This document shows positions 1,120 to 62,067 of a stretch of 64,000 nt of DNA, piece after piece. The position numbers were made by a program, and so were the translations under genes. Numbering within the stretch: the stretch's first letter is position 1; every line of letters starts with the position of its first letter. The notes beneath the pieces are model-generated. The model saw only the letters and a program-made list of their open reading frames with translations, ran no database searches and had not been told where the DNA came from. Source of the stretch: Haliotis cracherodii (Eukaryota); NCBI RefSeq assembly GCF_022045235.1, contig NW_027266265.1, forward strand, positions 3,224,001 through 3,288,000, read 5' to 3'.

Positions 1120-1241
1120 AGAAGAACGATTGATCAGTGTTTATTGAAACATTCTGGAAGGATGTGTTACCATTTAGGACAAATACAGGTATGCTAATTA
1201 AACATTCGCAACTCAATAGGATTATGTATGTGACCATGGAG

Positions 1242-1520
1242 TGAGTGAGTGAGTTAGGTTTAACGCCGCTTTTAACAGTATTCCAGTTATATCACGGCGT
1301 GTCAGCTTAATGTGGCAGGAAAGCCCGAAGTGATGCAGGTCTAAGACGTTTACCACTTCGGTGAAACCCACGAGCACGGGTATGGTGCTGACAAACCTAG
1401 AAACATAATCGGGGTGAACCGGGATTGGAACCCACAATCGTAGGTTTCTGGCGTGTCCAAGGGACGCAACTCTGCACAGCGAATCGCGGCGCCTTAGACG
1501 ACTGGGCCACCCGTGCCCCC
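1242..1520 (-). mobile_element. tRNA(Leu-like)-derived SINE family A
   Basis: A box TGGCCCAGTCGTCTAAGG, B box GGTTC.AATCCC, tail GCGGCGTTAAAC(TCAC)n. 14-bp TSD ATGTGACCATGGAG (1228-1241 / 1521-1534). Confidence 0.92.
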
Positions 1521-5834: not shown

Positions 5835-8800
5835 ATGAGTTGGGGATACGGAACCGAGAACGGTAAGTTGCTGCGGTGTGATAGTTCTTATTGTTCTTTA
5901 ATATTTCTCTGCTCGCTTTGTTCTTTATTCAGGTCAGATGTATTTCATGTGTGTTAATGAGCACTCTTAATTTTGTTTTTGCACCTTTCAAAAATCAGTT
6001 TGCAACCGGAATCTTTTCTCTGTGAAGGTGACTTTTTTAGATTTCTTATTTTTGATTTCCAACTTTTTAAAAAGATATTGCATTAATTTGGCAGGACATT
6101 GATAACGGCTTTTGAAACACAGTCAATATATTTGCAGTATTCTTTCTTTTGGGACAGTTCTTAGTATAGATAGATGATTTATTTAATAAACTCATTATCA
6201 CATCTATTATTTTTTAGATTCATTTACAAATATTTTTTGGTATAGTTTTTATTGTTTTAATTATAATCGTTCACATTTATTTTTGTCTTAAATGACACTG
6301 TCGTTGTAGGTGTAAGTTTGTTACCCTGTTGCTAGGTGAGACGTATATTATTTTTACCGAGCAAGTACAATATACAGTAACTAAGCAACATCTCGTCCTG
6401 ATGTTGAAATCGAATAATATTCGTTTGTTTGAATCCATACACCTTTTTATGAGCGAATATGACAGTTAGAAGTATTGCACAGAAAACGTTTTACAATGTG
6501 TATTTATCCTTCGGCATACTCTTCACGGGGTGTGTCCCCTTGTTGTTCAGTGAATGTAAACCGCATTCGTTCGCGTTTTGCCCTTGAACTAAACGACCCC
6601 ACATTTGTCGGCGGCTTGATATTTGAAATACACACTGGGTTCCGTCTTGTGCTACATCTGTTAACATAAGTCTAGACGCACCGATGGTGTGTATATGTAC
6701 TATAGTTTCCCCAAGGAGCGCATGGTAATGGGAGGAAGGTTCGTCTTCTTATATAAAACGGTACATGTTTTTCAGTTACCATACCTTTTAATAGTAAGCC
6801 CATTATGACTTTGTAATATTTTTGCCAACTTGACAGTTGGAGTTTGGTTGGTTAAGGGACTTCTTCAAAGCGTTTTGCATATCTATTTCAAATACCTGTG
6901 CTACTTCGTAGAAACACCTTTTTTATAACTTCATCTAAACATATTACAAACAGGCGTCTCTCTTAAGGAAACGTCCCTAGTTACGGGAATGCATCACAAG
7001 TGACATCTATATCCTTCTCTTAACGTAGATCTGTTGTGAAGGTGAAAGTGACAAATATCCATTAAGGTTGTCAGGTGGGGCTTATCAAGTCAGTGCACAC
7101 GTGTCAGTTGTCTGGCAGTACACCATCGACCTCCCGGTACCCGCAGTGCCTTCACTCAGGCGCACGGCGGACTGTGCATGACGTATGCCGGTCCTGATGG
7201 CTCTCTGTGGACATTAATCCTTAGTACCACGTGCCGTAAAGTAACAGCATGTAACATACACTTCTTAGAAAACTAGAACCCTTGAGGCAGATTCAACAAT
7301 GTTGTTTTCTACAAGTGTTCAGTAACTACAATAATTATGATATTGAGTAGAAGCAATGTAGACGGGTAGAAATATGAATCTCAATTAAGTGGGATGCATA
7401 ATTTCGGATCTTGCACAATCACACAATATTTATTTTGGATTTAATTGTACTACTTTGACAGATATTCTTGTACGGATATATCTGTGTATAAATCTGATGG
7501 ATTCGTGGAAAATGGTGTTCAGATAAGCCAGATGAGTTAAGATAAGATAAGCCATCCTATAAAGACCATACGGTTAAAAGCATCGACAAACCGAGGTACA
7601 ATGAAATCCTTTTTATTTGAAATGATTAAAGTAAATAACAGATGATTCTTACTAACCTGGGTTAAAAACGGACATTTGTAATTTGTACACCCTTCATATG
7701 TGGTTTTTAGCATCTTACTCATGTTTTAATGAGATGATTATCATAATATTTTTTATAAAATCAAGGGTATGGCCTTGACATGCTCCTGTTCTAGTGAGAT
7801 GGTTACTACCATATTGTAAAAACAAAAACGTGCAAACCATTGACATATCTCATTACCATACTGTATACACAAGAGTGTGTATAGCTTAGTCACGTATATA
7901 AAGCAACAGCTGGTCCTTCGAGAAACACTATACGTTGAATATTAATATAGAACAAATACTACAGTCCGAAATGTACAATGTACAATGAAGGAACAGATAT
8001 CTCATTGTAAGACATATGAGGACGCTAATTCGCAAGGACGTGTCATAGTATATATCTCTCCAGTTAATTCCCTTTGCGCCGCCATGCTCGGTTTAATCCA
8101 GTACACCACACACACAAGGTGACGAATGTTTTGTATATCAAACATGGCGTGCTCGTTTAGGTGCGTCTCAAAAAATGAATTAAATAAACTTAACGGCGCC
8201 TTTCACGATAGGCCAAATCAATTTGTTATATGTGTATTGACAATATGCCTCTGAATGATGCCTTACATAAATCTTTTATTGGGTTGAATTTATGACATTT
8301 CAAAATGCATTTAAACTTGTGATAAATAATATTCTGGGTAATAACGGATGTTCAACGGATGCTCACATACTTGCTGACATGGTTTTATGGGGCAATTACA
8401 CCAAACTTAAATACAATAAACATTAAACAGGCAAGAGCCGAAATTCACTTGAACAAGTTGGCGGGGTATGTCAGCAGCATGGAACATGTCAGGCCATGAC
8501 ATTGGTGGGTTACACTGGCACCCGTTGACAATACCAGGTGTCACCTAACCACTGTGTGCGTGTCAGCGTAGCCCAAGAACATAGGCAATCAATGCCCAAT
8601 ATCTACCATCTCAAATACTGTTCCGACTTTAATTGAAATTTAAAGTAGACAAACGTTTATTGATAACTTCTTGTTTATGTCACCTTGCCGTGTCTGTCAA
8701 GTCATGTTGTCTAATATCCGTATGTCACATTCTCTGATAACATTGTGCCACATTGTCTTTCACGTGATATTCCTGTTTTTTTCAGGACCCAAGTCATGGG

Positions 8801-11800
8801 TCAACAACTTCCCCATAGCCGCGGGCAAACAACAGTCTCCTGTGGACATCAACTCGACCAATGTCGAGTTCGACCAGAAGCTCGAGGCCAACCCTCTTTC
8901 TGTCAAGTACTATATCGAACAGAACATGGACTTCGAGAACACAGGGTTCTCCGTCAAGGCCAACATCCGGGAACCATCAAGTAAGTTCCACTTTAAATGA
9001 ACATCTTGCTTATTTAACGTGAGACAGTGAATGCTGTCTAACGTCACAACCAGCAATACCCTAGTCCATCACAGAGGCTCGTACAGAGTCGAGCCTGGGC
9101 AGTACAAGCCAATGGATGTACTCTCGGGGTTCTATAAAACCCAACAACCAAGTCTTCGAGTCTGACCACTAGAGCCGTTTTAGTCCACCCGTATGACAAG
9201 CATTGGTTGCTTAGGTGCATTTCTACCCGGTGTCCTCCAACCTTCCAACCATACCCAACTGCCCCCCCCCCCCTACCCCCCTAAACCATCCACCCATTTC
9301 ATTTGTCTCCACTTTACCCAGCACATCATCCGTTTGTCCGTCAAGACAGCTTGTTACAAAGATGCGAGGAGTTGTGTTGAACATGGTAACATATGTGTAA
9401 AATAAAATCTCCATTCTTTAATGCAGATAATCATAAACCATAAACATAATATTGTATAATCATGAATTACAATTTCCCAGCCATATCGATACAACGACAT
9501 CCTTTCTTCAACTGCAGAATCTGATTTGCCTATATCTAGCATGCTGATGTTGAACAATCTGTAACTGTGTTGCAGCTATCTCAGGGGGCCCCCTTGAAAG
9601 CACATATCAACTTGAGCAGTTCCATCTCCACTGGGGGTCATGTGACGAGAGGGGGTCGGAGCACACAGTGGAGGGCAAGACATTCCCAGCCGAGGTACTC
9701 TCTCCTAGACCACATGTAAAATATATCCGTCGTATATAAATGGTTATTTCAGTCAATCATAAGGCCACGACAAACGTATATTTTCCCAATGTATACAGAC
9801 TCGAGAAATGCGAACTTAAAGGGGAAGTGTACACGCAAAAATCACTTTCTTTCTTTTTCTAAACAAAACGCAATTTTAGAATTAGTTAGTATCTGTGTTT
9901 GAAAATATACACTCATTTTTTTTCACAGTGAAAGTAGGAAGCTCACAATAGTGTGAAAGTGATATGCCGTTATGAGGCCTTCGTTTTACGAGCGAAATAG
10001 GCCTGAGTTATCCCCCTTAGATTATGACGTAATTGGTGCCAATTTAACTGGGTCCCTGTCTATTCTCAACGCAAAAGATATCAAGGACCAGTTTGCGGTA
10101 AAACAACATGGTCTACGACACACTCCGGCGCAGTGGTGACTCAGCATAACACAATTCTGGCTGGCATCTGAGATGCTAGAATCACAAACTGTACCTACAC
10201 CACGTGAAGCGGCTCTAACAAAGCATGATGACGTCATAATGTTTATCAATTGGCACCAATGACGTCATATTGCAAGGGACATAAGCCATGGTGTTTTTGT
10301 TATGGAAATAGAACACTTGGAAAATGTGAAAAATATAAATCGTTTTAGTGCAAAAAATATGTTAATTGAATATGATGTTTTTTTATATTTTTGTCTATGA
10401 CACTTCTATGTTAACACTTTTAATGTGGAAAAAGTACAAGGAAAAAAGGTTCATTTCCGTGTGAATTTGCCCTTTAATGACTTAATGACGTACCTTCTAA
10501 CGTAATGGGTCGACAACAACAAAGATCTTGAGTCACAATTACTCTCCACTTAAACACGTACAGTCACAAGTAAACAATATTCTTTTCGATATTCAATTAT
10601 GTGCTTGTTTTCTTTACAAATGAATATCTGTTTTCAGCTTCATCTAGTCCATTGGAACCGAGATAAATATTCCAGCTTCGGCGAGGCCGCAGACAAACCT
10701 GATGGTTTGGCAGTGTTTGGCATCTTCTTGGAGGTAGGACCCTCAACTAAAGTCTCGAGCTAATGGAACGTGTACATTATTCCTTTAGGCTTGCGTGACG
10801 AATGAATCGCATGTAAAATATGTAATACAAGGAAAAGGTCTTGGTGCAAAACGTCCCAAGTGAATTTTATATTTTACGAATGCTTTTCACACTTTGACGA
10901 TTAACTGATCTCAACACGAGAAGGCCGTAGCTCCGAATTAAACTAATGAAACTATATTCCCATTTGTCTTCAGGTTGGCGCTGAGCATCCGGGTTTCAAA
11001 CCTTTAACCGACGGTTTAGATGCTGTCAAGTTCTGTTCCAAACATGAACAGGTCAAAGGCCAGTTCAACCCCAAATGTTTCCTCCCAGGTGAATTCTCAT
11101 TCATTCATCCATCTTTCCCTCTTTCCATCTGTCTTTACCCTACTCGCTATCCGTCAATTCATTTTCCTTATTCCAGAAACAAAGGGCTCCGTTCATACCC
11201 AGTAATGGATTCATTCATTGTTAAATTCCCATCATAGTAGTACTACTACGGAGAACAATAATGTCTATCATCTATATGCACTGGATGACTCAATATGAAT
11301 AGAATTATTTATAAGGCAGATACGCCGAATATGCAATTTGGCAACTGGACACGGTTAATTAATGAAAGTGTAAAGTGTCTGAATTAACTTACTAGTCTTA
11401 ACCTAAGCCCTGTATGTGTATGTGGGATCATGTACAATACTTCTTCTTCTCTCCAGAAACTCTGTCCGAGTACTGGACTTATCCCGGGTCTCTGACCACG
11501 CCCCCCTGCTACGAGAGTGTCACGTGGATAGTATTTAAAGAACATATGGTGGTGTCGGAGAGTCAGGTAAGCACACATTACCAACATGTACAGAAAATAT
11601 AGTTAATCAAATGTTTGTAAGGTCGTGTGAAGAGAACATATATTGAGAAGCCAAAGGAACTCTCACTTGATGTTGTCATGTTTGAACTTAACATCGCTTG
11701 AAAATATCTTAGGTTAGCAATAGTATATCCCAAAATACACTGTGCTGGCCCTAAGTCAGCACTCATACTTCTACGTGGTTATCTTAAAAAATATCATTTG

Positions 11801-12362
11801 ATTTAAAACGTATAATATGAAAAAATGGGAAAACTTTTTCGCATTATACACTGAAGGGTATCTTGAAAAATCTTGTCTTTCAAAATCATTGAGTCTGCCT
11901 TTTTCAAACACGGTAGGGGTCCTGTGGTTGCAAATTCATTTCTGATCACAGTCTTAATTGAACCAATCTATTTGTACACATAATAACCCAGCCACTGTTT
12001 TTTTCGAACTATTGGTTAATTTGATATACATTTAACAACAGTTCGTTCAATTTCCATCTATGTATTCTTTCTTGTTCCTCAGCATGTGTTTATGTAGGTT
12101 GGGACAATGGTTACTCCCAATAACAATATCCAATACGTATGTATCGTATATAAGAACCACTATAGTCACAGTCTAAAAGTTGAGACGAATATTAAATCCA
12201 CTGTCTCTTATCATTCCATGTCTTAGTTTTAAAAAATTCTGCTTTCAGTTAAAGGCCCTTCGAAGCCTGTGTTGGGGGGACTGTGACGGCGACTGCATCG
12301 TCGACAACTACAGACCACCGTGTGAGCTAGGCAGCAGAAAGATCCGAGCAGCATTTCATTAA
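5835..12362 (+). CDS. Alpha-carbonic anhydrase, cytosolic type, paralogue 1 (7 exons, 258 aa)
   Basis: Exons 5835-5862, 8786-8980, 9576-9694, 10638-10733, 10974-11088, 11457-11566, 12249-12362. All introns GT-AG with consistent phases; 777 nt total. Motifs MSWGY, QSPVDI, QFHLHWG (His94/96), GSEH (Glu106), ELHLVHW (His119), [15 protein letters not shown] (Thr199), DNYRP. No signal peptide. Confidence 0.96.
9820..10473. mobile_element. Kolobok-like non-autonomous DNA transposon in intron 3 of CA copy 1
   Basis: TTAA TSD (9816-9819, 10474-10477), AG...CT termini with imperfect TIRs, internal inverted repeat TGACGTAATTGGTGCCAATT / AATTGGCACCAATGACGTCA. Absent from copies 2-4. Confidence 0.8.
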
Positions 12363-40900: not shown

Positions 40901-41879
40901 GCAATTTTGCAACTGGACACGGTTAATTCGTGTTAATAAAAATAGTGTCCAAATAAACTTCTATTCTTAATCTTACCCCTGTAGGTGTATGTAGAAATCA
41001 CGTTTAATGTTTCTTCTTCTCTTCAGACACAATGTCCGAGTACTGGACTTATCCCGGGTCTCTGACCACGCCCCCCTGCTACGAGAGTGTCACGTGGATA
41101 GTATTTAAAGAACACATGGTGGTGTCGGAGAGTCAGGTAAGCACCCATTATCTACATTTTCAAAGGATATATTTCATTAAAAGTTAATTCAAAATAGTGT
41201 ATCGTTTGAAGAATTAAAATGAACATAAATACAGGAGCAAAAGATACTACACCTCTCAGCTGATTTTATCATATGTTTGAACTTCAGTTGGGATTATCTT
41301 AGGTTAGCAATATTATATCCCAAACATAAACTGTGCTGGTGGGAAGCCAGCAGTCATGCTTCCACGTCGTTACATTTTTAAAATTAGGATTAGATTTACA
41401 ACTTTAAAAATGAATACATACTTTTCACATAATACACATCTGCTGAAAATCACAGTTCAAACATGTGGTTGAAAATTGATAGTCTTCATTGTACCAATTT
41501 ATTTTTACATTAAATGGACAAGAAGGCTCCTGTTTGTCCCGTAGGCAAAATTACTATTTCATTCGCCGTGTAATATCAATTTTGATCTCAAATAAGAACA
41601 AACATTATTCATTCTAAGAAAATCAGCATATAAATATATGAAGCCCTTATACTCATCGATATAAAAACATCAACGCTGGGGAATAAAGCGACTAAAAGTT
41701 GAGATTTAAATCAAATCCATTGTCTCTTTTCATTCCATCCCTGAATAAGTTTATTCTGCTTTCAGTTAAAGGCCCTTCGAAGTCTGTGTTGGGGGAACTG
41801 TGATGGCGACTGCATCGTCGACAACTACAGGCCACCGTGTGAGCTAGGCAGCAGAAAGATCCGAGCAGCATTTCATTAG
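34951..41879 (+). CDS. Alpha-carbonic anhydrase paralogue 3 (7 exons, 258 aa)
   Basis: Exons 34951-34978, 38026-38220, 39115-39233, 40012-40107, 40547-40661, 41027-41136, 41766-41879. Intact frame and motifs; about 7 aa differences from copy 1. Confidence 0.96.
35165..36300 (-). mobile_element. RTE-X-like LINE remnant in intron 1 of CA copy 3
   Basis: KTKLIV...[11 protein letters not shown]...[10 protein letters not shown] and [13 protein letters not shown]. Confidence 0.8.
38440..38680. repeat. About 64-bp C-rich tandem repeat in intron 2 of CA copy 3
   Basis: CATCCAACTGTCCTCTCCTCAAA...CATCCAACTGTGCCCCCTCAAAC, 3-4 units. Confidence 0.9.
38720..38888 (-). mobile_element. SINE family B in intron 2 of CA copy 3
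   Basis: 14-bp TSD ATAAATGCAAGGAG. Confidence 0.92.
39430..39698 (-). mobile_element. Family C retroposon in intron 3 of CA copy 3
   Basis: Matches family C; nested in a larger insertion at 39241-39706. Confidence 0.85.
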
Positions 41880-43170: not shown

Positions 43171-43220
43171 CGTTCTCCACATAGTCCCGCGTCACACCGG
43201 TTCTGCTGTTCATTAGACTG

Positions 43221-43482
43221 GACCCGTGAAGATCCGGGATAGAATTGGTCTTAAGCAACCCATTCTTACCGTAAAAGGCGACAGTGCTTGTCATAAAAGG
43301 CAACCAACGGGATCGGATGGTCAGATTCGCTGACTTGGTTGATGCATGTCATCAAATCCAAAATGCGTGGATCGATGTTCATGATGTCGACCCCTGGATT
43401 GTTTGGTCCAGACTCGATTATTTACAGACCGCCATCATACAGATAGAATATGGATGAGTGCGGCGTTAAAAAACAAACAAAT
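43221..43482 (+). mobile_element. Family C retroposon
   Basis: GACCCGTGAAGATCCGGG start, GCGGCGTTAAA tail. Confidence 0.85.
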
Positions 43483-44689
43483 CCAAGTACAATGATAAAA
43501 AAGATGGGTTCCCTTCCAGTGTACTCAATAAATACAGCAATAAATGCAGCAAAATCTCTACCCCATTTTGTCATACCAGGTCAATCTCTCCGACTGGATA
43601 TATGTAAACACACATAATGTAGCTCAACTGAAACCAAACATACTTTTATCCAACAGAATAGTATCGAACATCAATAACATATCTTACCAGTGAATATTTT
43701 ATCAAAAGTATTCCTCCCGAATGCCTCCTGAACTAGGGCCTTTTTTGTGGCTGGTAAACAAAAAGTTTATATTCTGGAAAAATGTCACTAAAGTAATTTT
43801 CTATTGACTATGTTTTATATAAAGCAACAATGCCATGTTCAGATACAAAAGAAACAAAGCCAATGTCAGACAAAAATCTTCTATATTCCTTGCAATGTAA
43901 GATAGGCTTTTGCATAACCTTCGTCCTTGACAGCAGTACCCGCTCCTAATCCACAGTTGACGATGTTCCACTCGAGTCGCGATCTGTGACTGGAGCCGAC
44001 AACTGATGCTCATCACCTTCCAGAGTAGTGGCTGGCTTGTCCTCAATAACGAGTCTGCCATTCTTATAATAGCCCCTCTTGTTCTCAGATCTGAGCAAAG
44101 TCAGTTTCTCACGCTGTCGCTTATGACGAGTAATTGCAAGAAACCGAGCAAAAAAAATAAAAAACGTGAAAATAGCAAATCATATCCTATATTTTCAATC
44201 AAACTTTGTTAACAAGAATATTTTACATTAAGGGGCGATATGTACGAAATTAACCCTTAATGTAAACAAAAATATTTTTTACATTCAGGGTTGCGAGTCG
44301 ATGCTCTTGATGTCATTTTTTTAAAATAAGATTTAACACGTAACCCTTAATGTAACATTTTTTACATTAAGAGTATTTTTTACAGGGGTGTAACAAAGGG
44401 GAGGGCTCCTTTGCAGTTTATCGCCATACTAAACACGAATCAAAATTTTAAATCTTCATATATATTTTAAGTCTCTCTGCTTATATAATTCATCAATTTA
44501 TTTTTTTCCCTTTCAATACTGCTCCACTTTTCATAGTTTTTAAATATAACTTTGCATAAATGACTCAATTGTAAACATATTAACTTGGTCTCGTCGCTAT
44601 ATGGCTGAAATCCTACCGATGCGACGTTAAATTTTAACTCACTCACCCTCTGCTGTGGAGATGTTCATCTTTACCCAAGACCCTTAATA

Positions 44690-47030
44690 GACACAGATTT
44701 AAAGATTATTCATCTAAACGTTCGTAGTATAAAAGACAAACTAGATATCCTTGAAGTTGAGCTTAGACATAATGATGTAATTTCAATTGCTTGTCTGAAA
44801 CATGGTTCCACACGGGTATGCATAACAGCGACCTAATTATTCCTGGTTTCCAGGTTCCATTAAAGGTTTGTTTGTTGTTTAACGCCGCACTCAGTAATAT
44901 TCCAGCTATATGACGGTCTGTAACCAGACAACCCAAACAATCCAGTGATATACATTATGAGCATCGATCCACGCAATTCGGATACGATGAAATGCATCAA
45001 CCTAGTCGATTTAGGAAAGACAGGTCAACTCGAGGGGGTGGCATATTTATTTACGTTAGAGATAATATGTATGTCAAATATATGTATCCGCTTATAGTTG
45101 GTCTAGAGGCGATATGAGTACATGATAAATGCACAACTATTATGTGATTATTTGATTGGTACTGTCTATCGTGCAGATAAGAGTGGAGCGTATTGGGAAT
45201 TGATCAATGAATAGGAAACACAGTTGATATGAATATGTATACTGAAATTGCAGGAGATTTTAATATAGATACTTCGAGAGAATAATTAAAAAAATCGAAT
45301 ATTTGCAAATGGTGCATGGACGTTCACACATTATTAGAGAACCTACGAGGATCACCATACATTCCAGTACGTTGATAGATTTACATTTTGTGACAGACGT
45401 TGATAGTGTACAGGATTCGGGAGTACCTTGATCCAGTTTGTAGCGAATACAGTCCAATTTTTGTAACCATAAAAGAAATAATCCCTTTAAACGTAAAGTG
45501 CATTATTATTCCATAGCAGACCTAGATGGTTTAAATATAGACTTGCTGAAAATTGTTGGTGATTTAGTACTCTCATCGGGGGATGTGAACACAATTACTG
45601 ACGAATCTACATCTCGAAAAGACCCGTGAAGATTCCAGGGTCGAATATGTCTTCAGCAACCCATGCTTGCCGAAAAAGGCGAGTATGCTTGTCGTAAAAG
45701 ACGACTAACGGGATCGGGTGGTCAGGCTCGCTGACTTGGTTGATGCATGTCATCGATCCCAATTGCGTGGATCGATGCGCATGATATTAATCACCGGATT
45801 GTCTGGTCCAGACTCGATTATTTACAGACCACCGTCATATAGCTGGAATATTGCTGAGTGCGGCGTTAAACAACAAACCAACCAACCAAACAATCGAATT
45901 ATAAAAGTTTGTTGTAAACATATTCCTAATAAAATTGTTACCGTGCGATTAAAGGATCCACAGTGGATCAATAATGAGATACGTTCCTTAATAAGAAAAC
46001 GAATTCGACAACACAAAAAAAGCTAAAAGACGTAATACTCCATCTGAAATTTAGTAAATTTAGCAAATAATGTAATCGAATATGTCCGTAAGGAAAAGAA
46101 AGCATATGCATCTAACATTAATACTGTAATGAATAGTTCTTAAAGACATGATGACGTTTAGTAAAGGAATTTCTTTAATTTAAAACTGCAAAACACAATT
46201 TTCCCGCAATGATATTTGGGGATAGGTTGTATGATAATTACATGGATATTGCTAATATTCTCAATAGCCTTGTGGACAAATCTCGTATATGAAAACCTGA
46301 TATCCACTTTCCACCCTTTAGAACTATATAAAGTTGATAGGGGGGCACGGGTTGCCCAGTCGTCTAAGGCGCCGCGATTCGCTGTGCAGAGTTGCGTCCT
46401 TAGGGCACGCCAGAAACCTATGATTGTGGGTTCGAATCCCGGTTCGCCCCGATTATGTTTCTAGGTTTGTCAGCACCATACCCGTGGTCGTGGGTTTCAC
46501 CGAAGTGGTAAACGTCTGAGACCTGCATCACTTCGGGCTTTCTTCCCACATTAAGCTGACACGCTCACTCACTATAAAGTTGATAATCGATTAGTCAATA
46601 TAATTTTGATGGAAGATGAAGTTAGGGACATACACCTTTCCGTGTACACCACAAAGGCAACTTGTCCTGGTGGTATTGGAAATAAAGTACTTAAAAAACA
46701 GCTTACAGTTTAGTCCAAATCCGGTACAATGTGTGAAGCCCATTTCTGGTGTCCCCCGCCGTGATATTGCTGGAATATTGCTAAAAGCGGCGTAAAACCA
46801 TACTCACTCACTCACTAGTCCAAATCCTTACTGAACTATTCAATTTCACTCAACGAGCAATATTACCATCACTAAAGACAGAAGCTCTTTTCATTCCTAT
46901 TCATAAGAAGAATAACGTGAATAAATGCACAAATTACAGACAGGCTACGCTCACAAGTTGTTTAGCAAATATATTTGAAAAATGTTATTTAAACATATGT
47001 ATAACTATTTAAGGAATAATAACAATTTGC
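44690..47030 (+). mobile_element. Decayed CR1/L2-type LINE (endonuclease to RT start) with four nested short retroposons
   Basis: IIHLNVRSIKDKLDIL...ETW...IPGF...RKDR..RGGGIFIYVRD; PQWINNEIRSLIRKR; PGGIGNKVLK; PIHKK...NYR. Nested: family C (44866-45008 minus; 45621-45891 plus), family A (46340-46572, TSD TATAAAGTTGATA), family B 3' half (46723-46815, TSD TAGTCCAAATCC). Confidence 0.8.
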
Positions 47031-49699: not shown

Positions 49700-52600
49700 A
49701 TGCAATGGGGATACAGCACCGAGAACGGTAAGTTGCTGCGGTATAAATTATTCGTATTCTTTAATATTCCATTTTTGCATTGTAAGCCTTCTTATTTTTG
49801 ATTTTATAACTTTCTAAAATAGTATTGTATTAATTTGACACAGTAGGTGTATTTGCAGTATTCCTCCTATTGGGCAAGCGGTCTGAAAAGAATAACGACT
49901 CAAGAATGTAAAATCATTGTAAAAAAACACAAAATAGCTACGATTGAGAGTAAATATAATGTAAAGACGTGAAAGGTAAATATACTTATGACGACGTGCA
50001 TTATAAATAGTGATTTCACATTTTATTTCACAATATATGAAGGTTTATATATATCATAAAGTGACTGGCAGCGTTCACTTAGTGTAATTACAGTCCTGAA
50101 AATTCACAATACACCCGTACACGTACGTGTATTAAAGATCAACGTCATATCTAAACGGTGTCTACAAGTTTAAAAGCATGTCACACAGATAATTTGTTTA
50201 AAAGAACAGCTTCAAGATCCTTACAACAGTTTTGTTATTTTGACAGTTTTATAAATCTAGGTGTATTTCTGTATAAACTGTAATAAGGACAGTGCATAAG
50301 GAAGTGGATTTCATCTTCTATCTTGTTTAAATTACAGATTTTTGATTTTCTCTGGTCGGCACACGTGTTGGTGTATCTGCCTCTTTCAATCTCCAGATTA
50401 TGACAACTTAATTTAGTTAGAGCTAATCTATTATCTTTACACTTTACTATGAATACACAAAGTCAGCGATCTATAATAAACCCACTCAGCCACAGAGGCT
50501 TCCACAAAAATGAAAGTCCGACAACTAGTAGTCTAGATCACGTACTTTTTTTGTGGAAGCCTCGGTGGCTGAGTGGGTTAGATCGCTGACTTTGTGTGCT
50601 GGCGATTAGGTGCCTCGCTATGGCAAGTGTGGGTACGAATTCCGGACTTTTACCCAAAAGGTACGAGAATCTGTACTTTGCTAAGAAAGTGTTATCCTAA
50701 ATATAATTTCTTTTACACTTTACTGCTGAAACATACTTCTAAAGCCTAAATTTATCGGTTATAATTCCTTCATATCTCAGTTTTTGTGTTAACGTGATTA
50801 CCTTCAATCAGAAATTTGTTTTAAATAGCTTCATTGAAATTTGTGCAAGATGCATTTTCACTTTGAATTTGGGAAATAAGTGTGTCTTCAGATGTTCAAA
50901 AGATTGCAGGACATTTTGGGTGAGGCCAAATATTATAGCATTTCTCAGGCGCTGGAAAAACAAATGGACATATATATGTACAGAAAGAGGGTACAGTCTT
51001 CTATTACCTGTCACTCCCAGGATCTGCTTTGCTATTTTGATAGTGAACTCACATAACAAAGTGATTATGACCAATTTTGACACATTTCGGATAATGGGGA
51101 TGAGAAGTTGAATGCAGTGTACATGTTCCCATGTTTCAGTGCCACTCCAAGATTGTAGGAGTCCACTACATCAACGATTTGATTGCCCAATTTAAATTGA
51201 AGTTTATTTTCTTTGACGATCCTCCCAATAGAAGTATCTTTGCTACGTTAACCTTAAGTTAAACCCTCATAATGGGAATGCATCACAGGTGACACCATAA
51301 CAAATCTACGTTAAGAGAAGGATATAAGTGACAATCCCCGATTCAGGTTGTCAAGTAGGACTTATCAAGTCAGAGCACTCGTGTCAGTTGTCTGGCAGTA
51401 CACCATCCCGGTACCCGCAGTGCCTTCATTCAGGCGCACGGCGGACTGTGCACCACGTATGCCCGCCCTGATGGCTCTCTGTGGACATTAATCCTTAGTA
51501 CCACGTTACATAAAGTGACAGACAATTACTAGAAAATAGTGTTTAGGTAAATTATCCTATAATGACCATACAGTTAAAAGCATCGACAAACATACTCTTG
51601 AGGCAGGATGAAATCCTTTCATTGGGAAATGATTAAGTAAATAACACATGGTTGTTATTAACCTGGCTGAACAAAACGGACATTTGTAATTTGTGCATCC
51701 TTCGTATGTGTTATTTAAACTTTTGTTACTGTCTTCATGGGATTAAATTATTAATTATAACATTGTTTATAAATTACCGGTAAACCCTAGATATGTACCT
51801 CTTTAAATGTGATGGTTGTTACCATAGTGTATAAACAAGAGCGTGCATAGTCAGTCACGCGTGGAAAGCAATAACTGGTCCTTTGCGAAACAATATACAA
51901 TAAATATCAATACAGAGAAAAAGTACCACCATCCAAAATATGAAATGTTATTGCCCCGAATGAGCAGGTATGTCCGTGTGAGACCAATATGGACGTTCAT
52001 CGTATGGACGTGTTAAGTTATATCTTCCTCCAGTGAATTCCCTATGTGCCGCCACGCACGGCTTAATCCAATACAGTACACACACGAAATGACGTTAACG
52101 TTGTTTTTAATGTCAGTATCAAACATGGTGTGTTTATTTGGGGGCGTCTCACAACATGAATGACATAAACGAAACAATGCCTTTTACGAAATGCCAAATG
52201 CATTTGTTATATGTTTAATGACATGTTTTTATGCCTCAGAAAGATATGGGCATTTAACCTTACATTGGGTTGAATTTATAACATTTCAAAATGCATTTAA
52301 ACTTGTCATTACTTAAATTATTATCATTAGCATGTACAGATTAAAATAAGAAATGCTGCAAAGAGGGTTTGGGTGATACTGGCACAGTCAGGCTGGTCAG
52401 GGTCATCATCTGCTCAGGGTCCTGGCCCCCTCTGCACGCAGCACAGACAGCGAATGGGACTTCTCCCAGGAAGCGCTGCCTAGTCGAACCCATCCAGAAC
52501 TGTTCGGAGAATGTGAAGACTCCCCAACACTGCAGCCTTCTGCATTACCCAGATTGTCAGAAGAACTGTATTTCTGGTAGCAAACCTGGGTACTCTCCCA

Positions 52601-55600
52601 ATGTCAGTCAAGGGATTGGGAGGTACCAAACCTAAAGCACCAAGAACAATGGGGAGTCAGACAACTTAGTACTTGGGATGCAAGCGTGAGATTATTATAA
52701 GTAACGTAACAGTTTTGTCTTAAAGCCGTGTCTGTCATGCCACGTTGTCTGATATCATAATGTCACGTTGTCTGATATCTTTATGTCACGTTGTCGGATA
52801 TCTTTATGTCACGTTGTCGGATATCTTTAAGCCACGTTTTCTTATATCCTTATACCACATTGTCTTGTCATCATGTGATATTCTTGGTATTTCAGGACCC
52901 AAGTATTGGGTCAACAACTTCCCAATAGCCGCGGGCATGCAACAGTCTCCTGTGAACATCAACTCGACCAATGTCGTGTTCGACCAGAAGCTTGAGGCCA
53001 ACCCTCTTTCTGTCAAGTACTTCATCGAACAGAACATGGACTTCGAGAACACAGGGTTCTCCGTCAAGGCCAACATCCGGGAACCGTCGAGTGAGTCACT
53101 TTAAATGAACATCTTGTTTATTTCACGCGAGACAGTGAATGTTGTTTAACGTCGGTAAGATCAGAAGCTTGATAATAGTCGAGTGTGGGCCATGTAAACC
53201 AGTGACAGAAAGCTTGAACAACGACCAACGTTATTGCGATTCAGTGCAATCAACCAAGTCATCGAGTCTGCCCACCCGAGCAGTTTTACTCCACCCTTAG
53301 GAGAAGCATGGGTTGTTGTGGCATTCCTACCGCGAGTGAGCATGAGGGGGTAACACATAAACTCTCCTCATTTCGACCCGTGAAGATAGGATAGGTCTTC
53401 AGCAACCCATACTTACCATAAAAGGACACTATGCTTGTCGTAAGAGTTGACGAACGGGGTCAGATGGTGACGCTCCTTGACTTGGTTGATGCATGTCATC
53501 GTATCTCAATTGCATAAATCGATGCTCATGATATCAATCACTGGATTGTCTGGTCCAGATTCGATAATGAACTGACCAACGTCATATAGCTGGACTATTG
53601 CAGAGTGCGGCGTTAAACAACAAATATCTCACATCTCCTAACTCCACATTACAATCACCATATCATCCACACCTATCCAACTCTGCCCCCTCAAACCATC
53701 CATCCACACTCAACTGTCCCTTCCTCAATTACGCCAAATCTGGGGGCACGATTGGGCCAGTCGCCTAAGGCGCCGCGACTCGCTGTGCAGAGTTGTGTCC
53801 CTTAGGCACCCCAGAAACCTATGATTGTGGATTCGAATCCCGGTTCGCACCGATTATGTTTCTAGGTTTGTCAGCACCATACCCGTGCTCGTGGGTTTCA
53901 CCGAAGTGGTAAACGTCTGAGACCTTCAACACTTCGGGCTTTCCTCCCACATTAAGCTGACACGCCGCGGTATAACTGTAATAGTGTTAAACTCACTCAC
54001 TACTCGAAATCTGCCCATGTCTGGCATGCTGATGTTGAACATTGCGTAACTGTGTTGCAGCTATTTCAGGGGGCCCCCTGGACAGCACGTATCAACTTGA
54101 GCAGTTCCATCTCCACTGGGGGTCATGTGACGAGAGGGGGTCGGAGCACACAATGGAGGGCAAGACATTCCCAGCCGAGGTACTCTCTCCAAGACCACAT
54201 GTAAAATATATCCGTCAGTGTATAAATGGTTATTTCACTAAATCACCACGACAAACGTCTTGTCTCCCCATGTACGTATACATATGTGAACTAAATTACA
54301 TACATTCTAAAGTATTGAGTCATATTTTTTCTCCACTTAGACTGGCCAGAAGAAAACAAGTACAATCTTAAGTAAACAATATCCAATATTTTCGATATTC
54401 GATTCGATGTTATGTTCGTTTTTTGCAACTTGATATTTGCTTTCAGCTTCATCTCGTCCATTGGAACCGTGATAAATATTCAAGCTTCGGAGAAGCTGCA
54501 GACAAGCATGATGGTTTGGCAGTGTTTGGCATCTTCTTGGAGGTAGGCCCCTCAACTAAACTCTCCGTTCAATGAAACGTGTACATTTTTTCCCTCTTGG
54601 CCGGCGGAGCGAAAGAAGCGCATGTAAAATATATGTACTACAAGGAAAGGTTCGATGCAAAACATAAAAAGGGATTTTTTTATTTTGTGAATGCTTCTCA
54701 CACTTTGACGATTAACTGATTTTCGGCTGATGTCCATAATTAAAATAAGGAAACTATATTCCTTTCTACAATCAAGTACTTTACATAAATTAGGGTAGAT
54801 GGATCATAACAAGACGTACAATATGAGTATTCTAATCTGAACTTGGGGTTCCTGTGTTTCAACCCTTCGCTCCAAACCTGTCTCATCCAACATTTAAGTG
54901 AACGCATTGAGAGAGAATTAAGTGACACACATTTGAGTGTGATTTACACGCATTTATCTTCAGGTTGGCGCTGAGCATCCGGGTTTCAAACCTTTAACCG
55001 ACGGTTTAGATGCTGTCAAGTTCCGTTCCAAACATGAGCAGGTCAAAGGCCAGTTCAACCCCAAATGTTTCCTCCCAGGTGAGTTAAGTTCTCATTCATT
55101 AATCCATGTTTCCATCTGTCTTTACACTTCTCGTTATCCGTCAATTCATTTTCCTTATTCCAGAAACGTAGGGCTCCGTTCACATCCAGTATTGTATTCA
55201 TTCATTGGGAATTTTATATCATTGCACGGAGAACAATAATTTCAACTATATACACTGGATGACTCAGTGTGAATAAAATTATTCAAATGGCGTATATGCC
55301 GAAAATGCACTTTTTCAACTGGTCATTGTTATTTCGTATAAATGTAACAAAAACAGGGTCTAAGTTGACTTACGATTCTTAACCCAAGCCCTGTATGTGT
55401 ATGTAGAGACCATGTACAATAATATTTCTTCTCTTCAGACACAATGTCCGAGTACTGGACTTATCCCGGGTCTCTGACCACGCCCCCCTGCTACGAGAGT
55501 GTCACGTGGATAGTATTTAAAGAACACATGGTGGTGTCGGAGAGTCAGGTAAGCACACATTATCTACATTAATAAAAAAATGTAGTTAATTGAAAATTGA

Positions 55601-56349
55601 TTAAAATCTGATTTAGTCAAATGTTTGAGGGGTGTAATAGATACAACAAACAAATTGAGGAACAAAAGAAACCATACCTACAAGTTGATTTTATCATATG
55701 TTTAACTTCAATATCTAAGGTTAACGATATTATATTGCCAAAAATAAACTGCTGGCGCTAGGTCAGCACTCATACGTGGTTATATATATCTTTTAAAATA
55801 TGATTTTGTTTAAAACTTTTAATAATGAAATTGTTTTTCACATAATAATACACATCTGCGGATCGGTATCCGAAACATCATATCTTTCAAAAAAGTAAAT
55901 TTGCATTTTTTTATCACATTTCCAACATGGTAGAGGATCTTGTAGTTGCAAATTCATTTCTTATCTCTCTTTTCACTGAATGAATTTCATTTTAAACATT
56001 ATTATTCAGCTACGGAACTGTTGGTTGAATAGACATACATTCAAAACTACTTTCGGTATACTTTCTTTTGCCCCTCAGTATATGTGTATGCGAGTAGATT
56101 CACTCCCAATGGGAATACCATATGTATGTATCTTACATAAGAACAACAATGATCTGTCAAAAAGTTCAGATTAAATCCATTGTCTCTTATCATTCCATGT
56201 ATAAGTTAAAAAACGTATTCCGCTTTCAGTTAAAGGCCCTTCGAAGTCTGTGTTGGGGGGACTGCGACGGCGACGGCGACTGCATCGTCGACAACTACAG
56301 GCCACCGTGTGAGCTAGGCAGCAGAAAGATCCGAGCAGCATTTCATTAG
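49700..56349 (+). CDS. Alpha-carbonic anhydrase paralogue 4 (7 exons, 260 aa)
   Basis: Exons 49700-49727 ([10 protein letters not shown]), 52896-53090, 54061-54179, 54447-54542, 54964-55078, 55439-55548, 56230-56349 (2-aa DG insertion). Intact frame and Zn ligands. Confidence 0.95.
49890..51230 (-). mobile_element. RTE-X-like LINE remnant in intron 1 of CA copy 4, with nested insertions
   Basis: Paralogous to 35165-36300. Confidence 0.65.
50449..50712 (+). mobile_element. tRNA-derived SINE fragment with a fold-back inverted 5' end
   Basis: GCCTCGGTGGCTGAGTGGGTTAG (A box)...GGTACGAATTCC (B-box-like), preceded by its own reverse complement; flanked by duplicated TTTACACTTTACT. Confidence 0.65.
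52335..52700 (-). mobile_element. 3' fragment of an R4/NeSL-like (REL endonuclease) non-LTR retrotransposon
   Basis: Minus strand [11 protein letters not shown]...[18 protein letters not shown]. Confidence 0.7.
52735..52865. repeat. 23-bp tandem repeat upstream of the exon 2 acceptor (copy 4)
   Basis: ATGTCACGTTGTC(T/G)GATATCTTT, about 6 units. Confidence 0.9.
53375..53624 (+). mobile_element. Family C retroposon in intron 2 of CA copy 4
   Basis: Matches family C. Confidence 0.85.
53743..54003 (+). mobile_element. SINE family A in intron 2 of CA copy 4
   Basis: Matches family A; ends about 57 nt before the exon 3 acceptor. Confidence 0.88.
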
Positions 56350-58832: not shown

Positions 58833-58934
58833 ATCAGTGATCACTGTCAGTGTAAATTGGTTTATGACACCCTGGCCTCAAGAGCACAGCTCCACGACAA
58901 GTATTATAACCATGATCAAACATCTTCTGAACCA

Positions 58935-59210
58935 GGGGGCACGGGTGGCCCAGTCGTCTAAGGCGCCGCGATTCGCTATGCAGAGTTGCGTCCCTTTGGC
59001 ACGCCAGAAACCTATGATTGTAGGTTTGAATCCCGGTTCGCCCCGATTATGTTTCTTGGTTTGTCAGCACCATACCCGTGCTCGTGGGTTTCACCGAAGT
59101 GGTAAACGTCTGAGACCTGCATCACTTCGGGGTTTCCTCCCACATTAAGCTGACACGCCGTGATGTAACTGGAATACTGTTAAAAGCGGCGTTAAACCAA
59201 ACTCACTCAC
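58935..59210 (+). mobile_element. SINE family A
   Basis: TSD TCTTCTGAACCA. Confidence 0.92.
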
Positions 59211-60414
59211 TCTTCTGAACCAAAGTCGTATGACGCTCTTTGAAATCATTTCAGAAAGAGCATATGCTGGATTGTACCTTACAACTTGTGAAATGTTAAC
59301 ACAAAGGCCGCGGGGATATTACTCGACACGAAGGTAAAGTCAATCATTGGTAAGGTGAAGTCATCGTTATCACGCCAAAACGTTCAGGCTTTAGGACACG
59401 CCATGCGCACTGGACAATGGAACCGCCGAGTGACCTACATGGTTACATATTCATATGGATAAAACATGCTGTATTCCTTACACGTGTTGAAGCGCTTAAT
59501 ATTCCGATTAATGTATTTGACATTTCATTTATATGCTATTTTAACTTGATATACATGTATGTTGTTTGGGTTATATGCCTATGGAGGAAATTATTACATA
59601 TTGGAACAACTCCCTAGTAACAGTGAGGTTATCACGCAAACATTGTATTTAGCGATCCTTGGCGAGCTAAATACATAGTGTTTATTCCTAATACAGGATA
59701 TTTACCATCCCCAAACACACAAGCGTGATAACCTCTTTATCACATAATGTCATTCTTTAATTCTGTGCTTCAAAATCGCTTTCCCTTTTTCACAAACATT
59801 ACTGAAACATTGCGAGTTTTCCTGGAATGCGCGCATTAATATTTATTACATCACAGGGTAAGTGATGTGTCAGTCGTACAGTGACAGTAGCCAATATAGT
59901 TCCAACTGAAATCTGTTTCTTATACAGTGGCGAAGCAACATATACGCAAAACAACAATTGTTATTAATTGCCTTTCGCGGCAATCCATCGGTCTGTCCGC
60001 TAGAGTAACTGCCCTTTGTCAAAGGGAAGCTACTCTAACCCTAGTGTATGAGACGTAACGGCAACGGTCAGACGTTGTTGACATTCGGTCTGTCCTGTCA
60101 TAACTTTAAGAAGTGTTGTCAGATGTACACACAGCGACAAAAAGAAACAAGGTAACAATTCAAACATATTTCGGCCAAATCCAACTATTTTAATTTGTGG
60201 AGAAGGTTTCAAGCCGCAGAGGTATACAAGCATATGTACTGATCCCGCTTTGCTAGGCCTCGTGCCCTCGCAAAATTGTTTCGAAATTTATGTCTCCAAA
60301 GTTGCTAAAACTTATAAAATGCTTTAGCTACGTCACAGTTAGACACTGATTTTCAGTATATTAGACTGTTCTTTTGATAATGATAACAATTATCCCGGTA
60401 GTTTATCAGGGTTA

Positions 60415-61851: not shown

Positions 61852-62067
61852 ACCCGTGAAGATCCGGGATAGAATTGGTCTTCAGCACCCCTGCTTGCTG
61901 AAAAGGCGACTATGCTTGTCGTTAGAGGCGACTAACAGAATCGACTGGTCAGGCTCCTTGTTTTGGTTGATGCGTGTCATCGTATCCCAATTGCGTGGAT
62001 CGATGTTCATGATGTCAAAAACTGGACTGTCTGGCACAGACTTTATACAGACCGCCGTCATATAGCT
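61852..62067 (+). mobile_element. Family C retroposon (3' shortened)
   Basis: Matches family C. Confidence 0.82.

What the first reader, a model, noticed from the sequence alone, without database searches (positions are those of the whole stretch)
8935..8960. His64 proton shuttle replaced by Phe in all four copies (NTGFSVK instead of NNGHAFN/NNGHS)
Seen: the segment aligning to human CA II 61-67 reads N-T-G-F-S-V-K, giving Thr62, Phe64 and Lys67; position 91 is Glu. His94/96/119, Glu106, Leu198 and Thr199/200 are intact. Known: His64 is the rate-limiting proton shuttle, and CA III (Lys64) and CA V (Tyr64) are slower. Inference: a Zn-competent but slow or buffer-dependent CA, an alternative shuttle (Lys67 or Glu91), or altered substrate use. 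Amplification to four copies could compensate for low turnover or reflect a non-canonical role.
Basis: partly seen in the sequence, partly recalled or inferred. Interest (0 to 1): 0.75.

Follow-up and report, generated by a model that had tools for sequence, protein, structure and literature searches.

The report
Abalone carbonic anhydrases lacking shuttle histidine
Four neighbouring abalone genes encode intact cytosolic carbonic anhydrases with phenylalanine where human CA II has its proton-shuttle histidine, but losing that histidine is commonplace in invertebrate enzymes of this type, so the finding is real and fairly ordinary.

Summary
The copies are under purifying selection (dN/dS 0.09-0.31). 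Phe64 is also present in all six related proteins checked from two other Haliotis species.

- His64 is a minority state among the nearest relatives: 42 of 110, 15 of 119 and 27 of 68.
- Molluscan cytosolic CAs carry Leu, Ser, Ala, Glu, Lys, Tyr, Trp or Phe there, with at least 29 changes on a 144-row tree.
- A mussel relative with Lys64 has a measured kcat of 4.2e5 per s (PMC6010101).
- Thr62, Lys67 and Glu91 are clade-wide background, not Haliotis-specific compensation.
- Four adjacent paralogues keep His64, and they are tandemly duplicated too.

Phe itself is rare: Haliotis plus one unnamed lineage. I found no paper describing a natural Phe64 enzyme. Verdict: a new member of a known kind, of low interest.

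The first readers also noted this array on the same window (s1-829643).

The parts
5835..12362 (+). CA copy 1. Seven exons: 5835-5862, 8786-8980, 9576-9694, 10638-10733, 10974-11088, 11457-11566, 12249-12362 (stop included).
   Evidence: Exons found by reading frames and splice context. All introns are GT-AG. Six of seven exon translations occur exactly in database protein P0346.
8947..8949 (+). Phe64 codon (TTC) of copy 1, inside N-T-G-F-S-V-K (8938-8958).
   Evidence: Aligned to His64 of CA II.
23301..27433 (+). CA copy 2. Exons: 23301-23328, 24398-24592, 25229-25347, 25680-25775, 26170-26284, 26633-26742, 27320-27433. Phe64 codon at 24559-24561.
   Evidence: All seven exon translations occur exactly in P0346, a 595-aa database model that fuses copies 1 and 2.
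34951..41879 (+). CA copy 3. Exons: 34951-34978, 38026-38220, 39115-39233, 40012-40107, 40547-40661, 41027-41136, 41766-41879. Phe64 codon at 38187-38189.
   Evidence: All seven exon translations occur exactly in the 258-aa database protein P0342.
49700..56349 (+). CA copy 4. Exons: 49700-49727, 52896-53090, 54061-54179, 54447-54542, 54964-55078, 55439-55548, 56230-56349. It has a two-residue (D-G) insertion in the last exon. Phe64 codon at 53057-53059.
   Evidence: All seven exon translations occur exactly in the 260-aa database protein P0345.

Best explanation
The four genes encode ordinary, functional cytosolic alpha-carbonic anhydrases of an abalone. They belong to the molluscan cytosolic CA group, in which position 64 is not held as histidine and changes often. 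Phe became fixed there in the Haliotis lineage.

Shown: the zinc site (His94/96/119), the Glu106-Thr199 gate, Gln92, Tyr7 and the hydrophobic CO2 pocket (Val121, Phe131, Leu198, Val207, Trp209) are intact. The CO2/HCO3- interconversion step at zinc should therefore work as in CA II.

Inferred: without His64, and with Asn62 also replaced, the proton leaves the zinc-bound water by other routes. These could be direct transfer to buffer or small metabolites through the water network, possibly helped by Lys67. The likely result is a medium-activity enzyme (order 1e5 per s), like the measured Lys64 mussel and Ser64 coral enzymes, rather than a crippled one. The four copies are a tandem expansion kept by purifying selection, one of several CA expansions in this genome.
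For: - Gene structure: intact ORFs and 24 of 24 GT-AG introns. The exon models equal database proteins P0342, P0345 and P0346.
- Family: PF00194 matches over the curated cut-off on the window's exons.
- Catalytic residues: H94, H96, E106, H107, E117, H119, V121, Q92 and N61/G63 are invariant in 144 aligned relatives including these genes.
- Fold: the AF2 model of P0342 has pLDDT 95.7. Foldseek gives TM 0.94 and rmsd 1.5-1.6 A to CA II, XIII and VII structures.
- Selection: pairwise dN/dS is 0.09-0.31 at dS 0.09-0.16.
- Conservation of Phe64: it is present in all four H. rufescens and both H. rubra relatives checked.
- Lability of position 64: His in 42 of 110, 15 of 119 and 27 of 68 relatives; at least 29 changes on the 144-row tree.
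- Named examples: Lottia, Patella and heterobranchs Leu; Gigantopelta Ser, Leu and Trp; Mytilus Lys; oysters Ser; Pinctada Ala; chiton Tyr; Diptera Tyr; copepods Ala or Ser; amphioxus Ala.
- Measured kinetics of relatives: Mytilus MgaCA (Lys64) has kcat 4.2e5 per s and kcat/Km 3.5e7; CruCA4 has 2.4e5; hCA I 2.0e5; hCA II 1.4e6 (PMC6010101, passages).
- Corallium rubrum: 4 of 6 CAs lack His64 (PMC4981384, passages).
Against: - No enzyme assay exists for any Phe64 CA. A bulky aromatic side chain could obstruct the water channel more than Lys, Ser or Ala do.
- The published kinetics were measured in buffered assays, which can mask a shuttle defect.
- Expression of these four genes was not shown here. 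Read laying on copy 2 placed nothing on any exon. No run holding exon 2 is on record as RNA.
- The origin of Phe64 is unresolved. The backbone of the careful tree is unsupported (27/15). An AU test does not reject a clade of the Phe64 genes with the adjacent His64 paralogues (p-AU 0.74; the constrained tree is 12.45 log-likelihood units better than the quick free tree). Phe64 may therefore descend from a His64 gene within this cluster rather than from an already His-less gastropod ancestor.
- The tools give no model coordinates, so no distances could be measured around position 64.
Confidence: 0.8

Rival explanations
1. Dosage compensation. Phe64 makes a slow enzyme, and the four copies were retained to make up for low turnover.
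For: Four intact copies are kept under purifying selection. At least four copies are also present in H. rufescens. Copy 1 is closer to an H. rufescens protein (98.8%) than to its own paralogues (97.2% or less), so the duplication predates that species split.
Against: The adjacent His64 paralogues are also present in four tandem copies, two of them nearly identical. A further cluster of eight or more CA-like genes lies on another contig. Tandem multiplication is therefore general for CAs here, not tied to Phe64. Measured relatives without His64 are not very slow. No expression data are available.
Confidence: 0.1
2. Dedicated alternative shuttle. Lys67 (or Glu91) has taken over intramolecular proton transfer in CAs without His64.
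For: Raw association: Lys or Arg at 67 in 73 of 79 non-His64 rows against 10 of 65 His64 rows. Human CA III pairs Lys64 with Arg67 (Table 2 of PMC6158936).
Against: With phylogeny controlled, only 6 independent pairs exist. Position 67 is unchanged in about 5 of them (sign test p = 1). Lys or Arg at 67 also occurs with His64 in Hygrophila snails, scallops, horseshoe crab and termite. It therefore looks like clade background, at most permissive. Glu91 is the commonest residue in both classes: 25 of 45 His rows and 48 of 73 non-His rows. A lysine pKa near 10 is poorly matched to the zinc-water pKa (my own knowledge, not tested).
Confidence: 0.2
3. Changed or non-catalytic function: a CARP-like binding protein, or an enzyme shifted to esterase, COS or another substrate.
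For: Position 64 and the 62/65/67 rim differ from CA II. There is a Cys-rich C-terminal loop.
Against: All zinc ligands and gate residues are intact, unlike the CARP-like loci of the same genome, where the zinc-site motif is altered (L026, L044, L045). The hydrophobic CO2 pocket is conserved. The Cys-rich loop is shared with many gastropod relatives whatever their residue 64: 59 of 144 rows have 2 or more Cys.
Confidence: 0.05

Closest known systems
Mytilus galloprovincialis MgaCA (255-aa cytosolic-type alpha-CA, Lys64), PMC6010101
   Same: Molluscan cytosolic-type CA of the same length class. Zinc ligands and gate are intact and His64 is replaced. It has Thr62, Ser65 and Lys67 like the abalone genes (M-N-T-G-K-S-V-K in P0253). 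It is 53-60% identical to the abalone proteins.
   Different: It has Lys, not Phe, at 64. It has been purified and assayed (kcat 4.2e5 per s). The abalone enzymes have not.
Human mitochondrial CA VA / VB (Tyr64)
   Same: A natural aromatic residue replaces His64 in an active enzyme. CA VA also has Thr62 and Ser65 (Table 2 of PMC6158936). A CA VA-mimic chimera (7nzr) was the second-best PDB hit of exon 2.
   Different: CA V is mitochondrial with a presequence and has Met or Gln at 67. Tyr has a titratable hydroxyl; Phe has none. That Lys91 and Tyr131 serve as shuttles in murine CA V is recalled and was not seen in any call.
Human CA VII and CA II (closest solved structures)
   Same: Cytosolic, about 260 aa, same fold (E 4.6e-77 to 3mdz; TM 0.94). 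About 46-47% identical. The active-site core is identical.
   Different: They have His64 and Asn62, plus His residues at 15, 17 and 36 in the aligned N-terminal stretch (CA II). The abalone protein has no His before His94 (sequence of P0342). It also has a 3-residue deletion after position 72 and a Cys-rich loop near residue 230.
Human CA III (Lys64, Arg67)
   Same: A cytosolic isozyme without His64 and with a basic residue at 67 (Table 2 of PMC6158936).
   Different: I recall that CA III's very low activity is attributed largely to Phe198. The abalone genes keep Leu198.
Corallium rubrum CruCA1/3/4/5
   Same: Invertebrate alpha-CAs with intact zinc ligands and non-His residues (Lys, Asn, Ser, Arg) at the shuttle position (PMC4981384). 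CruCA4 was measured at 2.4e5 per s.
   Different: They are cnidarian and mostly secreted or membrane forms. None has Phe.

Membership tests
Alpha-carbonic anhydrase (Pfam PF00194, Carb_anhydrase) | Significant match to the family profile | tested here: met
   Exon-wise matches over the 27-bit cut-off at the window's coordinates, for example C2:3235453-3235584 at 56.9 bits and C2:3232785-3232988 at 41.5 bits. PF00194.27 is precomputed for P0218 and P0217.
Alpha-carbonic anhydrase (catalytically competent) | Three zinc-ligand histidines (94, 96, 119) | tested here: met
   Present in all four copies. Invariant columns in A1.
Alpha-carbonic anhydrase (catalytically competent) | Gate residues Glu106 and Thr199, plus Thr200 and Leu198 | tested here: met
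   G-S-E-H-T and L-T-T-P-P are present in all four copies.
Alpha-carbonic anhydrase (catalytically competent) | CA II-type fold | tested here: met
   AF2 pLDDT 95.7. Foldseek TM 0.94 and rmsd 1.5-1.6 A to CA II.
High-activity CA II-type isozymes | His64 proton shuttle with Asn62 and Asn67 water-network residues | tested here: not met
   Phe64, Thr62 and Lys67 in all four copies.
CA-related proteins (acatalytic CARPs) | Loss of one or more zinc-ligand histidines | tested here: not met
   All three histidines are present. By contrast, loci L026, L044 and L045 of the same genome have the motif altered.
CA III-like low-activity isozymes | Lys64 and Arg67 (Table 2 of PMC6158936), and Phe198 (recalled) | tested here: not met
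   The abalone genes have Phe64, Lys67 and Leu198.
Cytosolic (not secreted) alpha-CA | No signal peptide (the protein starts directly at the conserved W-G-Y motif), and no Cys23 partner for a Cys23-Cys203 disulfide | tested here: inconclusive
   Exon 1 encodes M-S-W-G-Y-G directly, and position 23 is Ala. No signal-peptide predictor was run. That the disulfide marks extracellular CAs is recalled.
Enzyme activity | CO2 hydratase activity that is inhibited by sulfonamides | not testable with these tools
   Needs a bench assay.

The most novel reading that the evidence does not exclude
In protostome cytosolic CAs the His64 shuttle is dispensable because a basic residue at 67 (Lys or Arg in 73 of 79 non-His rows) together with a rebuilt 62/65 rim provides a different, general proton-exit route. 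Position 64 is then free to be tuned by lineage: at least 29 changes, including reversal to His in freshwater Hygrophila snails. On this reading the abalone Phe64 enzymes are the most hydrophobic extreme of that tuning. They may be specialised, for example for buffer-coupled or partner-coupled proton hand-off.
Probability: 0.15. Interest if true: 0.5.

Novelty: new member of a known kind. Interest (0 to 1): 0.25.

Why it matters
It matters little for the specific claim. A histidine-less shuttle position is already documented in mussel and coral alpha-CAs with measured, respectable activity, and it proves to be the majority state among the nearest invertebrate cytosolic CAs.

Two modest points survive:
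- A natural Phe at position 64 has, as far as my searches go, not been described or assayed. An abalone enzyme would be a clean natural test of how much a non-titratable aromatic residue at 64 costs.
- The survey made here shows that position 64 is one of the most changeable active-site positions in molluscan cytosolic CAs while its neighbours Asn61 and Gly63 are invariant. That cautions against inferring 'slow' or 'odd' enzymes from vertebrate-centred rules.

Tried and rejected
- Close orthologue from exon 2 alone: the representative search found nothing above 50% identity, mostly exon-sized fragments without names. Orthologues came only after stepping through full-length relatives (P0054, then P0187, then P0218).
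- Expression: the look-up of sequencing runs listed 24 runs, of which 21 hold exon-2 words. None is on record as RNA; 14 are small contig sets labelled 'RNA? (a guess)'. Read laying on the whole of copy 2 (23200-27500) with X1, X2, X3 and X11 laid only three pieces of 40-56 letters. Two lie just upstream of exon 1 and one lies in intron 1. None is on an exon and there were no joints. This is inconclusive, and the tool itself warns that a filter drops contigs. No transcript-derived protein at 90% identity or more turned up either: the P0218 and P0217 clusters hold only NCBI models.
- Co-evolution of Lys67 with loss of His64: the raw table is striking, but the independent-pairs test has no power and shows no coupled change. 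I rejected it as evidence. Asn62 loss goes the same way in about 3.5 of 6 pairs and never the opposite way (p 0.125), which is suggestive only.
- Orthology of the Phe64 genes with the Leu64 genes of limpets: the quick tree suggested it (SH-aLRT 85). The careful 63-row tree leaves the backbone unresolved (27/15), and the AU test does not reject Phe64 genes plus adjacent His64 genes as one clade. I withdrew that claim.
P0342 has no His before His94. Its four His residues outside the zinc site and His107/His122 lie in the C-terminal half (residues 151, 172, 214 and 258 of P0342). By recall, the equivalent CA II positions are surface sites far from the cavity.
- Literature on Phe64:
  - 'carbonic anhydrase' + 'Phe64' returned 29 papers, 20 listed. 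By title and abstract none concerns a natural Phe64 CA.
  - 'H64F' returned 0 papers.
  - The Haliotis + CA search listed two H. discus hannai papers on 337-aa and 349-aa proteins; the abstract of the 349-aa one mentions an N-terminal signal peptide (abstract starts only). Their lengths show they are not these 258-260-aa genes.
  - PMC6639325 (passages) does not discuss position 64.
  - Supplementary alignments of these and other mollusc CA papers were not opened and may already tabulate position 64.
- Rows dropped:
  - A1 kept only proteins of 240-320 aa without X (144 rows). Fusions, long models and fragments were left out, for example P0091, P0261, P0267, P0282, P0284, P0339, P0340 and P0346.
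  - In one search the 13 alignment rows of four long repeat proteins (P0001, P0003, P0044, P0045) were set aside before the count of 68. One row (P0033) looks mis-registered by two residues and is probably His.
- Genome census: position 64 could be read at 24 loci. It is His at 12: the four neighbours, L011, L028, L037, L038, L039, L042, and the CARP-like L026 and L044. It is not His at 12: Phe x4, Lys at L041, Arg at L045, Tyr at L046, Gln at L056, and Ala in an H-G-A-S motif at L048-L051. Several other loci (L009/L030, L040, L043, L047, L052-L054) could not be read because the position falls at or beyond an exon edge.
Full report
WHAT IS THERE

The window is eukaryotic DNA: about 40% GC, with spliced genes. 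Exon 8786-8980 translates to a 64-residue stretch ending [15 protein letters not shown]. The motif N-T-G-F-S occurs four times, all on the + strand, at 8938, 24550, 38178 and 53048. Self-comparison shows four tandem units that are 80-94% identical, introns included.

Reading frames and splice context give a seven-exon gene of 258 codons in each unit. All 24 introns are GT-AG and all four reading frames are open. Copy 4 has a two-residue insertion in the last exon.

These models were later confirmed independently:
- The seven exon translations of copy 3 occur exactly in database protein P0342 (258 aa).
- Those of copy 4 occur exactly in P0345 (260 aa).
- Those of copies 1 and 2 occur in P0346, a 595-aa model that fuses the two genes.

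The sources name these proteins carbonic anhydrase 2-like (P0342 and P0345; P0346 is named an uncharacterized protein) of Haliotis cracherodii, on a contig whose length equals that of the window's contig. Steps that needed a full-length protein used these database entries.

phmmer of exon 2 against PDB chains aligns it to CA II residues 13-71 (E 2.1e-07). Phe lies opposite His64, Thr opposite Asn62 and Lys opposite position 67.

P0342 aligns over its whole length to CA VII (3mdz, E 4.6e-77) and to CA II in the same register. That alignment has a 2-residue insertion before position 64 and a 3-residue deletion after position 72.

All four copies keep Tyr7, Asn61, Gly63, Gln92, His94, His96, Glu106, His107, Glu117, His119, Val121, Phe131 and Leu198-Thr199-Thr200, and have Glu at 91.

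An AlphaFold2 model of P0342, made with a 144-row alignment, has mean pLDDT 95.7. It superposes on CA II, XIII and VII structures at TM 0.93-0.95 and rmsd 1.4-2.0 A.

The genome holds only these four exon-2 copies at 92-100% identity.

THE GENES ARE MAINTAINED

Pairwise Nei-Gojobori estimates were counted exon by exon. They give dS 0.09-0.16 and dN/dS 0.09-0.31 for the six pairs.

The same E-N-T-G-F-S-V-K-A motif is present in four H. rufescens proteins and two H. rubra proteins. Copy 1 is 98.8% identical to an H. rufescens protein but at most 97.2% identical to its own paralogues. The array therefore predates that species split. The two H. rubra proteins are 98.1% identical to each other and about 85-92% identical to the others.

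Expression could not be shown. No run holding exon 2 is on record as RNA, and read laying on copy 2 put nothing on any exon.

HOW UNUSUAL IS A NON-HIS RESIDUE AT 64?

It is not unusual.

(a) Same genome. Four further CA genes lie just downstream on the same contig (L031-L035). All read N-N-G-H-S-F, and two of them are near-identical tandem copies. Position 64 could be read at 24 CA loci in the genome, and His is present at 12.

(b) Representative library. Exon 2 had 80 hits at E 0.001 or better. After setting aside 4 long repeat proteins, 68 proteins remain. Of these, 27 have His, 11 Ser, 11 Ala, 4 Tyr and 3 Phe, and the rest are Leu, Asp, Glu, Met, Cys, Gln, Lys or Thr.

(c) Relatives of the plankton-derived protein P0054. 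Going by the named hits, these are largely copepod and insect CAs. His is present in 15 of 119, against Ala 55, Ser 22 and Tyr 19. Named examples:
- Drosophila, Musca, Bactrocera and Chironomus: Tyr.
- Tigriopus: Ala.
- Lepeophtheirus: Ser.
- Branchiostoma: Ala.
- Macrostomum: Ala.

(d) Relatives of the clam protein P0187. His is present in 42 of 110.

(e) The 144-row alignment (proteins of 240-320 aa). Asn61 and Gly63 are invariant, while column 64 reads His 65, Leu 18, Ser 11, Ala 11, Phe 9, Glu 9, Tyr 8, Lys 7, Thr 2, Cys 2, Arg 1 and Trp 1. The column needs at least 29 changes on the tree. Strongly supported clades each have their own state:

| Clade | Residue at 64 |
|---|---|
| Haliotis | Phe |
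| Lottia and Patella | Leu |
| Gigantopelta | Ser, Leu, Trp |
| Heterobranchs | Leu |
| Hygrophila (nested within heterobranchs) | His |
| Neogastropods | Ala, His, Tyr |
| Veneroid, myoid and dreissenid clams | Glu, Ala, Ser, Thr |
| Mytilus | Lys |
| Pinctada | Ala |
| Oysters | Ser, Arg |
| Scallops and unionids | His |

Outside Haliotis, Phe appears in one unnamed lineage (P0222, P0228, and the fragment P0025).

WHAT THE LITERATURE ADDS

- PMC6010101 (passages read). The 255-aa Mytilus galloprovincialis enzyme has Lys in place of His64. It still shows kcat 4.2e5 per s and kcat/Km 3.5e7, twice hCA I and about a third of hCA II. The same table lists the coral CruCA4 at 2.4e5 per s.
- PMC4981384 (passages). 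Four of six Corallium rubrum CAs have the shuttle His replaced by Lys, Asn, Ser or Arg.
- PMC6158936 (passages and Table 2). Human CA III has Lys64 and Arg67. CA VA has Thr62, Tyr64 and Ser65. CA X and XI have Arg64.
- PMC5727267 (passages). The giant-clam CA2-like enzyme keeps His64 but has Thr62. The paper cites a 20- to 30-fold loss of activity on mutating His64 in CA II.
- I found no paper on a natural Phe64 CA or on these abalone genes (listing and abstracts only).

LYS67, GLU91, THR62

Lys or Arg at 67 is present in 73 of 79 non-His rows and in 10 of 65 His rows. That contrast is mostly phylogenetic. Only 6 independent pairs differ at 64, and in about 5 of them position 67 is the same (p = 1). 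Lys or Arg at 67 also accompanies His64 in Hygrophila, scallops, Tachypleus and Zootermopsis.

Glu91 is the commonest residue in both classes.

Replacement of Asn62 by Thr or Pro tends to go with loss of His64. It goes the same way in about 3.5 of 6 pairs and never the opposite way (p 0.125). This fits decay of the His64-centred water network better than recruitment of a new shuttle.

P0342 has no histidine before His94. CA II has His15, 17, 36 and 64 in the aligned stretch.

ORIGIN OF PHE64

The origin is unresolved. A quick tree placed the Haliotis Phe64 clade with other gastropod and chiton non-His clades at SH-aLRT 85. The careful 63-row tree leaves that backbone unsupported at 27/15. An AU test does not reject the Phe64 genes and the adjacent His64 genes as one clade: p-AU is 0.74, and the constrained tree is 12.45 log-likelihood units better than the quick free tree. 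The neighbours sit on long branches, so neither reading is safe.

VERDICT

These are intact, selectively maintained cytosolic alpha-CAs whose zinc chemistry should be normal. Proton export must bypass position 64, as it does in many invertebrate relatives, two of which have measured medium-high activity. Phe at 64 is a rare state of a very labile position. It is fixed in Haliotis and not described in the papers I could search.

This is a new member of a known kind. The copy-number-compensation and special-function ideas have no support. The Lys67-shuttle idea remains possible but is not supported by the controlled test.

Noticed in passing
L031-L035 (G000:C2:3296893-3335381, just downstream of the window): There are four more cytosolic-type CA genes, one on the + strand and three on the - strand. 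All have N-N-G-H-S-F (His64) and are about 36% identical to the window's exon 2. Two of them (L034, L035) are near-identical tandem copies. One equals database protein P0343.
   Followed up: partly
window 5835-27433: A 595-aa database model (P0346, 'uncharacterized protein') joins copy 1, minus its last residues, to copy 2 through translated intergenic or upstream sequence. This is either read-through transcription or an annotation artefact.
   Followed up: no
window 12267-12325 and the same place in copies 2-4: The Cys/Asp-rich loop (C-W-G-D-C-D-G-D-C) is not peculiar to these genes. 59 of 144 aligned relatives have 2 or more Cys in this loop, and most gastropod relatives read L-C-C-D-E/D-C-G. 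It is the lowest-confidence part of the model, with a block mean pLDDT of 81. The D-G insertion of copy 4 is shared with two H. rufescens proteins.
   Followed up: partly
alignment A1 / trees: The freshwater Hygrophila snails (Physella, Lymnaea, Biomphalaria) have His64 but are nested with strong support inside the Leu64 heterobranch clade. This looks like an apparent regain of the shuttle histidine.
   Followed up: no
window 1241-1520, 1893-2172, 16021-16300, 46341-46564, 53737-53991, 58929-59214: A dispersed repeat of about 280 bp is present in both orientations at 88-95% identity. One inverted pair lies 370 bp apart at 1243-1520 / 1893-2170. A second repeat of about 240 bp lies at 18446-18685, 39432-39704, 43215-43486, 45620-45889, 53385-53624 and 61852-62067.
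   Followed up: no
L046-L054 (G000:C9:18.29-18.59 Mb): A cluster of eight or more divergent CA-like genes. In four of them (L048-L051) the position-64 region reads H-G-A-S and six residues after the H-F-H zinc motif are missing. They may be nacrein-like or otherwise modified CAs.
   Followed up: no
L026, L044, L045 (G000:C78 and C56): Three CARP-like loci have the H-x-H zinc motif altered (I-R-I-H-F-H, I-K-F-H-F-G, I-K-L-H-F-G). Two of them keep His at position 64 and one has Arg.
   Followed up: no
Copy 4's exon 1 is also the most diverged (M-Q-W-G-Y-S). The transposon claim was not examined here.
   Followed up: no
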